Shown here: positions 9,301 through 13,134 of the stretch, in pieces | Layout: every line of letters starts with the position of its first letter | How positions within the stretch are numbered: the stretch's first letter is position 1 | Assembly: GCA_016748015.1 (NCBI GenBank) | Contig: JAAOMT010000521.1 | Span: 94,907 to 158,906 of the forward strand | Direction of reading: 5' to 3' | Origin: Geosiphon pyriformis uo1 | Taxonomy: Eukaryota > Fungi > Glomeromycota | DNA: 64,000 bases | Notes under the pieces: generated by a model | What the model saw: only the letters and a program-made list of their open reading frames with translations | Databases searched by the model: none | Told to the model about the DNA's origin: nothing | Translations under genes and position numbers: made by a program

Positions 9301-10227
9301 TTATAAAAAAAAGTAAAAATTTTAAGATATTTATTTTTTAAACATAATTATTATTTTAAGTTTTAAAATGAATTAAATATTTAATAACTTTTATTTATAT
9401 AAGATAATAGTTTTGCAATTTTTTTGTCGATTGTTAATACTTTTCCAATTCTTTGTTATTTGTTGCCCATTGCCAAATCCCTATTTTTTTTTAGTATCTA
9501 ATGTTGAAACTAGACTGAAAATGTAATCTTGACCAAGATATGATAATGATGAACATTAAACTTGTTTTGAAATCTTTTGAATGTTTGGAGGCTGTGTTTT
9601 AAGTAAACACTCATGTTTCCAGATCCTATGTTACAATAGGGAGTATGCATATTAGCTATGCCTGGTGGTTTTCTATTTTTTTTACATTATTTAGTCTAGT
9701 ATATTAATTTTTTTTTCGGATATGAGATATGGATCCCACGGTTTTAAGGGAGATGTAAATTTGATTTCTATATTAATTGTATTTAGCCATTTTAGGATAA
9801 CAGAGTCAAAAATAATGAGTCATGAGGATTTGCTTAATATTACATTAGTCATAAGGATCTGCATAATAATATAAAAAATTTCCAGAAAGCACCAAGGTTT
9901 TAAAAAGTGATGCTTTGTTTTTAATCACTACATATTAGTTAACCCCACCCTTGTATTTTTGTATTTTTATTTTGCATGAAAAACAAATGCGTAATTTTTG
10001 ATCTCAAAATCAATAACTTAGAGGCAGTAACATATATAAAGAGGTGTTTTCTGCCTTTAAGCAAAATTTTATTCTATATGAGATTACTCTTATCTTTATC
10101 AACAACAAATTACCAGCGTCCACCAACTCATGAACCTAATAGCTATAACTAGTATGATTAACAACTCACCACTCACAACTCACAAATTCAAAAAACACTA
10201 AAAAAATTTAAGAGGTTCATTATCGTC

Positions 10228-10340
10228 CCTAGTTGTATTGATAACCACAGCAGGTATCAAAGGTTAAAAGTCTCTAGTTGATGAAACAATTCAGGTAAAA
10301 GTGTTGATGTATCTCTTCTAGCTCTAAGTGTTGGGTAAGG
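10228..10340 (+). rRNA. Decayed 28S (LSU) rRNA fragment 1 (non-functional)
   Basis: gtattgataaccacagcaggtatcaaaggttaaaagtctctagttgat (from 10235) matches conserved LSU GTACTGATAACCGCAGCAGGTCTCCAAGGTGAACAGCCTCTAGTTGAT; gctctaagtgttgggta (10321) matches GCTCTAAGGGTYGGGTA. Confidence 0.7.
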
Positions 10341-10448
10341 AAGGGAAACATTCTTTACCAGAAAGAACTCCAACTTTAACCAAAGAAACTCAACCAAGCA
10401 TGGGATTTCCAACTCCTTTATATCGCCAAATGTGGTGTTCTCTAACCA

Positions 10449-10720
10449 CTGTGCATGCACTCATTCTGCCAAATGTCTGTTTTCATTTATGGTCTATGAC
10501 ATGAATTGTTATATCTCTGTGCATGTACCCATTCTGCCGAATGTCTGTTTCTACTGACAGTCAATGACATAAATTGTTATACCTCTGTGCATGTACTCAT
10601 TCTGCCGAATGTCTGCTCTTACTTATGATCAATAACATAAATTGTTATTTAATCTCTGTGCTTGCTGCATTCCAGCTAAATGTCTGTTTCCACTTATGGT
10701 TATTGATATGCATCATAGGT
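10449..10720 (+). repeat. Tandem repeat, ~68-bp unit x4
   Basis: ctgtgc unit starts at 10449, 10517, 10585, 10656 (periods 68, 68, 71); consensus ~ctgtgcatgtactcattctgccgaatgtctgtttccacttatggtcaatgacataaattgttatatct. Confidence 0.9.
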
Positions 10721-10723
10721 TAA

Positions 10724-10824
10724 ACTATTCCTATCTACTATCTAGTGAAACTACAGCCAACAGAACAGGCTTGACAAAATTGGCAGGAAAAAAATACTCT
10801 ATTGAGCTTGACTCTAATTTGATA
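10724..10824 (+). rRNA. Decayed 28S (LSU) rRNA fragment 2 (non-functional)
   Basis: 101-nt ungapped match to the conserved LSU segment ACTGTCCCTATCTACTATCTAGCGAAACCACAGCCAAGGGAACGGGCTTGG...GTTGAGCTTGACTCTAGTTTGACA. By my count 19 mismatches, 16 of them C>T/G>A. Confidence 0.9.
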
Positions 10825-10825
10825 C

Positions 10826-11195
10826 AGATAACCACTAACCACCAATAATTTGCGAATTCAAAATTCAAATAATCACCACTCACCAATAATTCACAACTCA
10901 ATATTTGAATAACCATTACTCACCAAAAATGCCTGAATTCAATATTCAAATAACCATTACCCACCAATAATTTGCAATTCAACATTTGAATATAACCACC
11001 TAATAATATTTTGCAACTCAACATTTGAATAACCACTGGCCATCAAAAATGCACAAATTCAACATTCAAATATAACCACTACTTACAAATAATTCAACTC
11101 AACATTCGAATAACCATCACTCACCAATAATTTACGTTTTAACATTTGAATTACTATGCTCACCAGTAATTCGCAATTCAAAATTCGAATAACCA
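10826..11195 (+). repeat. Degenerate tandem repeat, ~40-bp unit, ~9 copies
   Basis: Recurrent accactcaccaataattcgcaattcaacattcgaataacc-like unit. Confidence 0.85.
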
Positions 11196-11304
11196 ATGAA
11201 TACAAAATAGAAATTCATAAACAATCGATTATCAAATAACTGAATTAAATTTTAGGATTAGGTTGTGAGGAATTGATAATTGTTAGTCTGTTATTTATGC
11301 CTTG

Positions 11305-11418
11305 CAAGAATAAAAAGTGTAGGAGGGTAGTTTAAGATTTCTTACAAGAGTAAAAAACGAGAGGGGGTAGTTTTAGTTTAAGATTTTTTACAAGAATGAA
11401 GAGCGGAAGGAAGTAGCC
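11305..11418 (+). repeat. Short tandem repeat, ~43-bp unit x2.5
   Basis: caagaataaaaag..gagggtagtttaagattt / caagagtaaaaaacgagagggggtagttt..aagattt / caagaatgaagagcggaaggaagtag. Confidence 0.6.
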
Positions 11419-13134
11419 ACATTTGTCAATTATCTTTTTTTTATCTATCTAGTCTATAGAAAAATTGTTCACCCATTGCCAATTTTGATAAACTCTTCTT
11501 ATTTACTGTTTATTGTTTAAGCCTATTGAAATTTAATTCAGAAATTTGAAATGATCAATATAACATATTTAAGAAACCTAATGTATAATATACTATTGTT
11601 AATAATATATGTATTTTTAAATGATAATAGTTCAGTAATAACTTTAAAAATTGCTAATATTGGCTTAAGTCCAAGCAATAATAACTTTATTTTTAAACCA
11701 CTGGTTAAATATTCTTGAAACTTTTTTTATGCAAGTTCAGATTTAAATATTAAAATTTAGGCAATATTGAGCATATTTAATATACTTTTTCACTGTGTAA
11801 ACCGAAAACCCTCTGCTCTTGCTATCGAAATGTATTAATTTGATCAACTATGAATGAAAAATTTAGCGTTTTCAAAAAAAAACAATGAGTAAAAGTACTT
11901 GCTAAAAATCATGTTCAGTCTGGTCATTCAATACATTTTTATCGTAAATATGTGAAAATCTTGATTTATTACTTGGGAGTTATCGATGCTCAAGTGACTT
12001 TGATATATCTTAGGATATTATTGTCAAAACCAATCACATGCAATAATTCTTGGGTCAAATAGACGAGAGTTTTATTGTTATATAAAATCTAATATCTAAA
12101 TCTTTTAAATTAAGTTTCGTTTCAATTAATTATGGATTTTTATTTATTTATGCAAAAGTGATTTTTTTAATGCTCAAATTATTTTTGGTACTTTCTAAAT
12201 TTGATAAAAGAAATATATTCAAAATTTTGGGGGGTATAATAATACAGAGATTAATATTATAAACTCGTGATATAGTAATTTTTCGCATAAAAGTTTAATA
12301 TTTAAAACAGTTTTGAAAACAAATAATTTTTATGATCATTAATTCATTTTAGTTTAACGCATTTATTTTATTAATTTCTTTTTAAATTATTTTGGTTATC
12401 TGTTAGCTTGTTACTTCAATTTATAATAATACAATTTTAGCAAAAATTCTAATTTTAATTAAAAATCCAAAAAATCTGTGAAACCATTCTTGAACTTTGC
12501 GAAATTGTAAAAAGTATTTATAATGACTGTTTTTTTCTTCTAATATTTTTCATAAGCTATGCTATTTTGAATAATTAACATTATATTTGTGATATAAATA
12601 AAATTTTCTTCAGAGGCGAAATTTTAAAATTTATTAAATCAGCACAAGGGCCTATTTAGTCAGCCAAAGTTTAAGACTAAAGAAATCAAAAAACTGACAC
12701 ACAAGCTAACTCCTCATGGCTGGAAAATCATGTATGAAAATTATTTCGTTATAGCAGTCGAAATCAAAGCACTATAATGCATAATAAATCATAATTGAGG
12801 CAAATATTAAATATAAAAAATATTAAAGAAACTTATCCTAATTTAGTATGCTCTTTAATTAAGCACTATTTGATTTATTAGCAAATTATAAGGTTGAATA
12901 AATAAAAAGTTATTAATTAATTAAAATATTATTATTTATTCATTAGTATCAAAAATAAACAACATAGAATATGTGAAAAAAGTATTTGGATAAATTCATA
13001 TCATCTAGATTTGCTATGCTCTTTCTAATTTAAATTCAGTTAGATCAGGTAATTCAAGAAATTTTGGCAATTCCAACATCATAACAATTTGAATCACATT
13101 TATCATAAAGCTAAAAATTCCTTTTAGTGATTTT

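What the first reader, a model, noticed from the sequence alone, without database searches (positions are those of the whole stretch)
10080..11420. Mosaic of 28S rRNA fragments interleaved with tandem repeats, colinear with LSU rRNA
Seen: two clear LSU pieces (10228-10340, 10724-10824) on the same strand and in rRNA order, ~400 nt apart, roughly their spacing in fungal LSU as I recall it. A weaker piece lies at ~10080. Intervening and downstream sequence is replaced by 68-, 40- and 43-bp tandem arrays, and the 40-bp unit contains aataaccactac, resembling the next LSU motif GAAATACCACTAC. Similar motifs (tttgtc.att...cccattgccaa) at ~9423-9478 and ~11422-11482 may mark boundaries. Inference: not a simple rDNA pseudogene, but possibly an rRNA-derived non-autonomous mobile element or satellite, or a small-RNA source.
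Basis: partly seen in the sequence, partly recalled or inferred. Interest (0 to 1): 0.8.

Follow-up and report, generated by a model that had tools for sequence, protein, structure and literature searches.

The report
Decayed 28S fragment inside a fungal repeat
This is one of about 40-60 copies of a non-coding repeat in the fungus Geosiphon pyriformis that carries a rearranged 0.6-kb piece of the fungus's own large ribosomal RNA gene. It is a genomic fossil being eroded by C-to-T mutation, and it shows none of the usual marks of a jumping gene.

Summary
Window 10202-10823 (+ strand, rRNA sense) derives from host 28S nt 1967-2665, with nhmmer E-values of 8.5e-23 and 3e-31.

It is one colinear fragment:
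- 28S 1967-2126.
- About 42 nt in place of 28S 2127-2445.
- A weak 2446-2471 match.
- The 28S 2507-2575 segment multiplied into the "68-bp array".
- 28S 2576-2665.

So the 68-bp array is itself rRNA-derived. I found no support for rRNA origin of the 40-bp array, for the "weak piece at 10080", or for the proposed boundary motifs.

The region belongs to a Geosiphon-only repeat family of about 40-60 copies on at least 40 contigs. Every copy has the same 28S breakpoints, so the rearrangement happened before amplification.

Copies differ almost only by C>T/G>A transitions, up to 19%, against about 1% transversions. This is the genome's RIP-like hypermutation, and it makes the similarity look patchy. 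I saw no sign of constraint on RNA or ORF.

I found no TIR, LTR, poly(A) or TSD. Homology runs on into multi-kb modular blocks, usually next to a class-3 lipase (pseudo)gene.

Best reading: an orphan rDNA fragment that multiplied passively. Two earlier follow-ups in this scan reached similar conclusions on other copies. Interest is low to moderate.

The parts
9420..12380 (+). Extent of this copy of the repeat, as delimited by homology breakpoints specific to this copy. The family continues past both ends in other copies.
   Evidence: L007/C635 aligns colinearly to 9420-12380 at 81%. Flanks beyond both ends are shared among the other copies but differ in the window.
9681..11864 (+). Core segment shared by every flanking context (A, B and C types).
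   Evidence: Many copies start at 9681. Three different downstream contexts begin after ...GAATGAAAAATTT at 11864.
10202..10336 (+). 28S-derived piece 1, equal to host 28S nt 1967-2126 in sense orientation, with small internal deletions.
   Evidence: nhmmer E 8.5e-23. BLASTN 10219-10298, E 2e-13. Coordinates mapped.
10337..10378 (+). About 42 nt standing in place of host 28S nt 2127-2445, a GC-rich variable stretch that is probably an expansion segment (not verified).
   Evidence: Alignments. The same junction is present in all 18 aligned copies.
10379..10404 (+). Weak colinear 28S match, equal to 28S nt 2446-2471.
   Evidence: nhmmer E 0.06. BLASTN of the consensus: 23 nt at 91%, E 2e-4. Suggestive only.
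10425..10674 (+). 68-bp minisatellite. One truncated 43-nt unit (10425-10467) is followed by three full units starting at 10468, 10536 and 10604. Each unit is a copy of host 28S nt 2507-2575.
   Evidence: TRF period 68. Global alignment of the unit to 28S 2507-2575 is the best of about 7200 windows on both strands, and 0 of 5000 shuffles reach it.
10675..10823 (+). Last array unit running on into 28S-derived piece 2. Together they equal host 28S nt 2505-2665, with a 10-nt deletion.
   Evidence: nhmmer E 3e-31, alignment spans hmm 676-829. BLASTN 10724-10822, E 9e-24.
10828..11200 (+). 40-bp tandem array with 81- and 120-bp higher-order periods. Origin unknown; not shown to be rRNA-derived.
   Evidence: The test against 28S is not significant.
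11288..11416 (+). Three degenerate 43-bp direct repeats.
   Evidence: the repeat finder family D4, 63-79% identity.
10257..10460 (-). 67-aa remnant of an ORF antisense to the 28S module. It is 91-108 aa in cleaner copies and is annotated in NCBI as Geosiphon hypothetical proteins. It evolves neutrally.
   Evidence: No Pfam hit. Synonymous fraction of GC>AT changes is 0.324 against 0.333 expected, and new stops 0.063 against 0.052.
8324..9425 (.). A different repeat family abutting the 5' breakpoint. Not part of the 28S family.
   Evidence: Many genomic matches end at window 9425-9428. Window 8776-9419 does not align to the upstream flank of other 28S-family copies.
12381..14600 (.). Sequence that follows the 3' breakpoint only in the window, C656, C340 and C525:46218 group. 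In most other copies a block with a class-3 lipase pseudogene follows here.

Best explanation
A fragment of nuclear 28S rDNA (nt 1967-2665) was once inserted outside the rDNA as an orphan pseudogene. There it lost a ~320-nt variable stretch, picked up point changes, and had a 69-nt piece (nt 2507-2575) multiplied by slippage or unequal exchange into a 68-bp minisatellite.

This already rearranged piece lay inside a larger non-coding, modular repeat unit, usually 0.6-1.2 kb downstream of a class-3 lipase gene and convergent with it. The unit was then copied to about 40-60 places in Geosiphon pyriformis. The 28S piece was a passive passenger.

Copies are now being destroyed at very different rates by the genome's repeat-directed C-to-T hypermutation. 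The window copy is moderately hit, which is why only the best-preserved stretches still look like rRNA.

Shown: the origin from 28S, a rearrangement shared by all copies, the copy number, the hypermutation, and the lack of constraint.

Inferred: a single original insertion, passive amplification, and the mechanism of amplification (block duplication or an unidentified large element).
For: - Significant, colinear, sense-strand similarity to the host 28S.
- The same 28S end-points (1967-2070 and 2563-2663) occur in about 40 places, at up to 95% identity to 28S, and the same internal junctions occur in all 18 aligned copies. The rearrangement therefore preceded amplification.
- The flanks hold no other rDNA parts.
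- Identity of each copy to the family consensus is 97.7-99.8% when transitions are ignored, but only 81-98% overall. 76% of changes are C>T/G>A, and ts/tv ranges from 1.6 to 20.6 between copies.
- Conservation is flat across rRNA-derived and other parts, and the antisense ORF is neutral.
- No ORF above 110 aa, no long TIR and no LTR in 12-kb composites.
- Homology continues past the element for several kb in many copies.
- A Lipase_3 remnant (E 1e-9) sits in the same position and orientation in at least 18 copies.
- Other orphan 28S fragments exist elsewhere in the genome, so such insertions do occur.
- The only protein-level relatives of the ORF are from Geosiphon, and two metagenome pattern scans were blank.
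Against: - 40-60 copies on at least 40 contigs, in both orientations and with only ~1-3% transversion divergence, look like a burst. That is easier for a transposon than for segmental duplication.
- At window 11864 the shared sequence stops at one point and continues into three unrelated contexts, as a true element terminus would.
- The modules recombine: a 9681-type 5' side occurs with both A- and B-type 3' sides.
- I could not define the ends of the larger unit, and I found no empty site.
Confidence: 0.6

Rival explanations
1. The ~2.2-kb core (window 9681-11864) is itself a non-autonomous transposable element whose body was built from a 28S fragment plus minisatellites, a fungal counterpart of rDNA-derived elements such as SINE28. 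An unidentified autonomous element would mobilise it. The larger shared blocks would then be later duplications of loci that already carried it.
For: - A sharp common 3' breakpoint at 11864 with three different downstream contexts.
- Many copies begin at 9681.
- The copies are dispersed on at least 40 contigs in both orientations.
- Low transversion divergence suggests a recent burst.
Against: - No TIR, LTR, poly(A) or simple-repeat tail and no recognisable TSD.
- The 5' side is not sharp. The sequence upstream of 9681 in 'B' copies is a permuted duplicate of neighbouring sequence.
- The 3' tail is not shared with any more abundant family.
- Flanks are shared within each context, and both main contexts carry a lipase gene in the same orientation. 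That fits inheritance of a locus better than independent insertions.
Confidence: 0.2
2. The repeat is a functional RNA locus: a transcribed, possibly spliced, non-coding RNA or small-RNA source that uses rRNA-like or anti-rRNA sequence. One route would be read-through from the convergent lipase gene, giving RNA antisense to 28S.
For: - An earlier follow-up on another copy (s1-495525) reported apparent transcription and splicing.
- NCBI gene models exist on the antisense strand.
- The lipase gene consistently converges on the module.
Against: - The 28S-derived parts are no better conserved than their flanks and lose C/G fastest.
- The ORF shows no excess of synonymous change.
- Many copies have lost 30-60% of their cytosines.
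- The gene models may be purely ab initio. I had no RNA data.
Confidence: 0.08
3. The family is what remains of whole ancestral rDNA units, for example a former tandem array that decayed after glomeromycetes dispersed their rDNA.
For: - The rDNA is dispersed and heterogeneous in this genome. Copies on C633 and C659 are only 95% identical, and one copy is broken.
- Tandem sub-repeats next to 28S sequence recall an intergenic spacer.
Against: - No other 28S, 5.8S or spacer similarity was found in 12-kb composites around 15 copies.
- The element has no similarity to the 1.5 kb downstream of the functional 28S.
- All copies share identical internal deletions, so a single rearranged fragment was copied, not whole units.
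Confidence: 0.03

Closest known systems
Orphan rDNA fragments and rDNA pseudogenes outside the rDNA loci (for example degraded rDNA units in the human genome, PMC5381670)
   Same: It is a non-functional piece of an rRNA gene lying in ordinary DNA. It carries deletions in universally conserved core sequence and decays neutrally.
   Different: Here a single rearranged fragment is present in about 40-60 copies because the surrounding repeat was amplified. Part of it has also become a minisatellite.
SINE28, the mammalian 28S-derived SINE (Longo et al. 2015, as listed in the review PMC10946416)
   Same: It is a dispersed repeat family whose body includes a 28S rDNA fragment.
   Different: The unit here is at least 2.2 kb rather than SINE-sized. 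It has no A-rich or LINE-derived tail and no TSDs, and its flanks are shared between copies. It is a fungus-specific family.
Transposons carrying rDNA-derived modules (Pokey with IGS-derived repeats; Cassandra TRIMs with 5S sequence; PMC10946416)
   Same: An rDNA-derived segment plus tandem sub-repeats sits inside a repeated unit.
   Different: Those elements have defined termini (TIRs or LTRs) and a known transposition mechanism. None was found here.
R2/R1 28S-specific LINE target region and the I-PpoI/group I intron site (from my own knowledge of these sites)
   Same: The amplified 69-nt segment (GCCAAATGCC...CCCTATCT) starts a few bases 3' of the TAAGG/TAGCC site used by R2.
   Different: There is no reverse-transcriptase remnant. 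The 28S sequence appears to run continuously across that site into the array (and my reading of the consensus). The phase of a tandem array is arbitrary, so the coincidence carries little weight.
RIP (repeat-induced point mutation) of ascomycetes
   Same: Copies of a repeat differ almost only by C>T/G>A transitions. Some copies are nearly untouched and others have lost 30-60% of their cytosines.
   Different: The context is CpG plus a 5' T/C rather than CpA. RIP signatures have been reported as not detected in the AM fungus Gigaspora margarita or in Mucoromycotina (PMC8647823). The scan has noted this process many times in this genome.

Membership tests
rDNA-derived pseudogene / orphan rDNA fragment | Significant sequence similarity to the organism's own rRNA gene | tested here: met
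   E 9e-24 and 2e-13 by BLASTN. E 3e-31 and 8.5e-23 by family profile. Other copies reach up to 95% identity to the host 28S.
rDNA-derived pseudogene / orphan rDNA fragment | Located outside an rDNA unit and unable to make rRNA | tested here: met
   No other rDNA parts in the flanks. About 320 nt of 28S are missing, a 69-nt segment is multiplied, and there is a 10-nt deletion in the core. Rfam's LSU model does not score it.
SINE (rRNA-derived, SINE28-like) | Short unit (below ~700 bp) with defined 5' and 3' ends | tested here: not met
   The shared core is about 2.2 kb, and homology continues for several kb in most copies.
SINE (rRNA-derived, SINE28-like) | A-rich, simple-repeat or LINE-derived 3' tail | tested here: not met
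   The common 3' breakpoint reads ...GAATGAAAAATTT, with no tail. The last 225 bp are found only in family copies, 59 candidates.
SINE (rRNA-derived, SINE28-like) | Target-site duplications flanking each copy | tested here: inconclusive
   No copy with both ends in unique DNA was available, and flanks are shared between copies.
TIR DNA transposon / MITE / Pack-MULE | Terminal inverted repeats | tested here: not met
   No inverted repeat frames the region. No inverted repeat of 90 bp or more lies at element scale in 12-kb composites, including little-mutated copies.
LTR retrotransposon derivative (TRIM/LARD) | Long terminal direct repeats | tested here: not met
   No long direct repeats more than 700 bp apart in the composites. 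The 9423/11422 motif pair is two short words and was not recovered as a repeat.
Helitron | 5'-TC and 3'-CTRR ends with a subterminal GC-rich hairpin, inserted at AT | tested here: inconclusive
   The 11864 breakpoint has no CTRR or hairpin. The true ends of the larger unit are unknown.
Satellite DNA | Units arranged head-to-tail in long arrays | tested here: not met
   Only the internal 68-, 40- and 43-bp arrays are tandem. Family copies are dispersed in both orientations on at least 40 contigs.
R2/R1-type 28S-specific LINE insertion | Reverse-transcriptase-bearing element interrupting 28S at the specific site | tested here: not met
   No ORF above 68 aa in the window copy. No Pfam hit for the ORFs tested. 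The sequence between the 28S pieces is itself 28S-derived.

The most novel reading that the evidence does not exclude
The 2.2-kb core (window 9681-11864) could be a new kind of fungal non-autonomous mobile element whose body is a miniaturised 28S segment plus rRNA-derived minisatellite. It would spread by a mechanism that leaves no TIR, LTR or poly(A) signature, for example Helitron-like or recombination-based, and would prefer the 3' flank of class-3 lipase genes.
Probability: 0.15. Interest if true: 0.55.

Novelty: new member of a known kind. Interest (0 to 1): 0.3.

Why it matters
On its own this matters little. It adds a fungal example to the short list of dispersed repeats built around 28S rDNA.

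It has some practical and secondary uses:
- It shows how a conserved rRNA segment can seed a minisatellite.
- It flags several annotated Geosiphon 'hypothetical proteins' (G9A89_003830, _002883, _002870, _002305, _003406, _014340) as translations of this repeat.
- It could mislead rDNA-based read mapping or barcoding in this genome.
- The family is a clean ruler for the genome's C-to-T hypermutation. The copies are about 99% identical at transversions but range from 2% to 19% transition divergence.

Tried and rejected
- **Rfam.** Gathering and E<=10 scans of the window and an E<=0.01 scan of cleaner copies gave no LSU hit and only chance snoRNA/miRNA matches. The short decayed pieces escape the 3.4-kb model.
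- **68-bp and 40-bp units against the whole 28S.** Unconstrained local alignment was not significant. The positional test later supported only the 68-bp unit.
- **C402 as a less-deleted intermediate.** Rejected. It is a GC-rich, different LSU gene with a ~510-nt insertion, not a family member.
- **Whole decayed rDNA unit.** Rejected.
- **Coding potential.** No long ORFs. The recurrent antisense ORF has no Pfam family and is neutral. ORFs in flanking blocks gave nothing except Lipase_3.
- **The ~85-bp presence/absence segment at 9735 as an intron.** Rejected. It has no GT..AG ends and is a local duplication.
- **The spacer between core and lipase.** Not alignable between the A and B contexts.
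- **The family outside Geosiphon.** One protein search and two exact-pattern metagenome scans found nothing. These searches have low power.
- **Annotated loci for the ORF models.** The look-up of encoding contigs returned nothing because records of the window's own genome are withheld.
- **More copies with flanks.** The ends of the larger unit and any empty sites could therefore not be pursued.
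Full report
**Organism and setting.** The window is G000:C640:94907-158906 of a 128-Mb, AT-rich assembly. Earlier scan notes name it Geosiphon pyriformis. I confirmed this independently: the only database relatives of an ORF in the element are NCBI 'hypothetical protein G9A89_...' entries from Geosiphon pyriformis. The neighbourhood is gene-poor and made of repeats.

**Is the rRNA similarity real?** Yes.
- I located the host 28S gene with the Rfam LSU model (C633:698261-701929, 3335 bits) and compared it directly with the window.
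- Window 10724-10822 matches 28S nt 2563-2661 (83%, E 9e-24). Window 10219-10298 matches nt 1988-2067 (79%, E 2e-13). Both are in sense orientation on the + strand.
- A profile HMM built from 18 family copies raises this to E 3e-31 (28S 2505-2665) and E 8.5e-23 (28S 1967-2126). It adds a weak colinear hit at 28S 2446-2471 (E 0.06). In window coordinates these are 10673-10823, 10202-10336 and 10379-10404.
- Rfam itself reports nothing here, even at E<=10, nor in cleaner copies.

**The 68-bp array is rRNA too.**
- The profile alignment runs from the second 28S piece back into the last unit of the 68-bp array.
- A lead from another first-stage note (s1-486639) suggested the units derive from the adjacent 28S region.
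- An unconstrained local search of the unit against the whole 28S was not significant.
- A global alignment of the unit consensus to the colinear 69-nt segment (28S 2507-2575, GCCAAATGCC...CCCTATCT) scores 9, against -9.3 +/- 4.2 for shuffles. None of 5000 shuffles reaches it. It is the single best of about 7200 sliding windows on both strands; the next best scores 4. I fixed the phase after seeing the alignment, so the shuffle figure is somewhat optimistic. The rank-1 position at exactly the colinear place is the stronger argument.
- Unit starts in the window are 10425 (a truncated 43-nt unit), 10468, 10536, 10604 and 10675.
- The module 10202-10823 is therefore one colinear 28S fragment (nt 1967-2665). 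About 320 nt (2127-2445, a GC-rich variable stretch) are replaced by about 42 nt, a 69-nt segment has been multiplied about four-fold, and 10 nt are deleted.

**What did not hold.**
- Nothing upstream of 10202 resembles rDNA.
- The 40-bp unit's resemblance to the 28S motif AATACCACTACC (host nt 2734-2745) is no better than chance.
- No other rDNA part occurs in the flanks of 15 copies.

**A family, with the rearrangement fixed before amplification.**
- Window 9400-11500 finds 99 matching pieces in the genome. The last 225 bp of the core find 59 candidate places, all of them family copies.
- Searching the genome with the 28S gene shows about 40 places carrying the same two pieces with the same end-points (1967-2070 and 2563-2663), at up to 95% identity to the host 28S.
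- All 18 aligned copies share the internal junctions.
- Even a 'de-mutated' consensus remains 8-14% different from the host 28S in universally conserved core sequence, and the differences include transversions. The founder was therefore already a drifting pseudogene.
- I found no relatives outside Geosiphon, in searches of low power.

**Why it looks like a mosaic.**
- Relative to the family consensus, 76% of all substitutions are C>T or G>A. G/C sites change 8.5 times as often as A/T sites.
- Ignoring transitions, every copy is 97.7-99.8% identical to the consensus. Counting transitions, identity ranges from 98% down to 81%, and GC from 45% down to 24%.
- The ts/tv ratio runs from 1.6 in clean copies to 20.6 in others. 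In the worst copies 30-45% of non-CpG cytosines and 55-65% of CpG cytosines are converted, with a preference for a 5' T or C.
- The mutation is therefore episodic and copy-specific rather than clock-like. It matches the RIP-like process the scan has already reported many times in this genome. [quoted passage not shown]
- The window copy is moderately affected: 91.5% to consensus, ts/tv 11.9, GC 35%. This explains why only the best-preserved stretches were obvious to a reader.

**No sign of function.**
- Column-wise conservation is flat (0.78-0.96) across the whole element. The 28S-derived, GC-richer parts are, if anything, the least conserved. I did not see the ~150-bp near-invariant stretch mentioned in note s1-505866.
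- A 91-108-aa ORF antisense to the module recurs in cleaner copies and is annotated as hypothetical proteins. It has no Pfam family.
- Its GC>AT changes are synonymous in 32.4% of cases against 33.3% expected. New stops arise as often as expected.

**Is it a mobile element?** I found no structural hallmark.
- There are no inverted or long direct terminal repeats in the window or in 12-kb composites around seven copies, including little-mutated ones.
- There is no ORF above 110 aa and no A-rich tail.
At 9420 the window and its close relative C567 abut a different repeat whose copies end at 9425-9428, whereas six other copies share a different, mutually homologous upstream flank. At 12380 the window, C656 and C340 diverge from five other copies that again share their continuation.
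- In those copies homology runs on for 2.8 kb and, in C635/C76, for about 10 kb. Upstream it runs 1-4 kb in several copies.
- The downstream block contains a class-3 lipase pseudogene on the opposite strand (Pfam Lipase_3, E 1e-9).
- By reading coordinates across, at least 18 copies have a lipase remnant 0.6-1.2 kb beyond the core, always convergent with the 28S sense strand. These fall into two contexts, A and B. Their spacers do not align, but their lipase parts are homologous.
- All contexts share only window 9681-11864. At 11864 the common sequence stops at one point and continues into three unrelated sequences (A, B, and a unique gene region in C721). This is the best argument for a discrete element.
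- The 5' side is not sharp, because the alternative upstream sequence is a permuted local duplicate. The 5' and 3' variants also occur in mixed combinations.

**Verdict.**
- The most economical reading is an orphan 28S fragment that was rearranged once and then multiplied passively inside a modular repeat block associated with lipase (pseudo)genes. It is now eroding by C-to-T hypermutation (confidence 0.6).
- A genuine non-autonomous transposon built on the 28S fragment remains possible (0.2).
- A functional RNA (0.08) and decayed whole rDNA units (0.03) are unlikely.
- Known comparators are rDNA orphons and pseudogenes (PMC5381670), SINE28, and other TEs with rDNA modules (PMC10946416).
- Two earlier follow-ups in this scan (s1-495525, s1-505866) studied other copies and reached compatible conclusions.
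- This report adds the exact anatomy, the rRNA origin of the 68-bp array, the neutrality tests, the lipase association and the hypermutation-based explanation of the patchiness.

**Limits.** I had no RNA data.

Noticed in passing
L002-L020 copies of window 10000-10900: Copy-specific, transition-only hypermutation. ts/tv runs from 1.6 to 20.6 between copies of equal transversion age. 55-65% of CpG and 30-45% of other cytosines are lost in the worst copies, with a 5' T/C preference. The scan has already reported this many times for this genome.
   Followed up: partly
G000:C633:698261-701929; C659:1039955-1043623; C659:998722-1001651; C751:5084-6131: The rDNA copies are dispersed and heterogeneous. 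The two C659 28S copies are only 95% identical to the C633 copy. One of them is broken into pieces, and the differences visible in alignments are largely transitions.
   Followed up: partly
L043 (G000:C402:1-2559): This is a GC-rich LSU rDNA unlike the host's (88-92% identity in core regions). It has a ~510-nt insertion between CTCTCTTAA and GGTAGCCAAATG, the classic group I intron / I-PpoI / R2 site. It is probably from another organism in the sample. Rfam scores it as LSU (548 bits) but reported no intron family.
   Followed up: partly
G000:C668:911869-912093; C624:124179-124454; C787:1355642-1355845; C362:79234-79432: Other isolated 28S fragments (86-96% identity, 200-280 nt) lie outside rDNA and outside this family. 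Orphan rDNA insertions therefore recur in this genome.
   Followed up: no
Genome-wide; e.g. C563:176309-354766: There is a very large class-3 lipase gene family, with more than 150 matching loci (511 first-look candidates). Many have open frames and often sit in clusters.
   Followed up: no
window 55605-55878, and L012 (G000:C681) at ~2862-3127 just upstream of its truncated copy: A ~270-bp segment is 87-90% identical to sequence lying 1.2-1.5 kb downstream of the C633 28S gene. It is probably a transposon that also sits next to the rDNA. In C681 it truncates the 28S-family copy.
   Followed up: no
window 16220-19150 and window 8324-9425: Two further repeat families. One is a ~2.9-kb unit with at least 10 copies at 75-81%. 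The other has copies that end sharply at window 9425-9428.
   Followed up: no
L033:8170-8494 region (G000:C525, ~19170-19490): A ~320-bp segment inside the B-type lipase region recurs in at least 12 unrelated places at 81-89% (C434, C609 x3, C594, C639, C529, C788 x2, C404). It may be a small mobile element.
   Followed up: no
P0001-P0006: Six NCBI gene-model clusters (G9A89_003830, _002883, _002870, _002305, _003406, _014340) are translations of the strand antisense to this repeat's 28S module. They are probably spurious models.
   Followed up: yes
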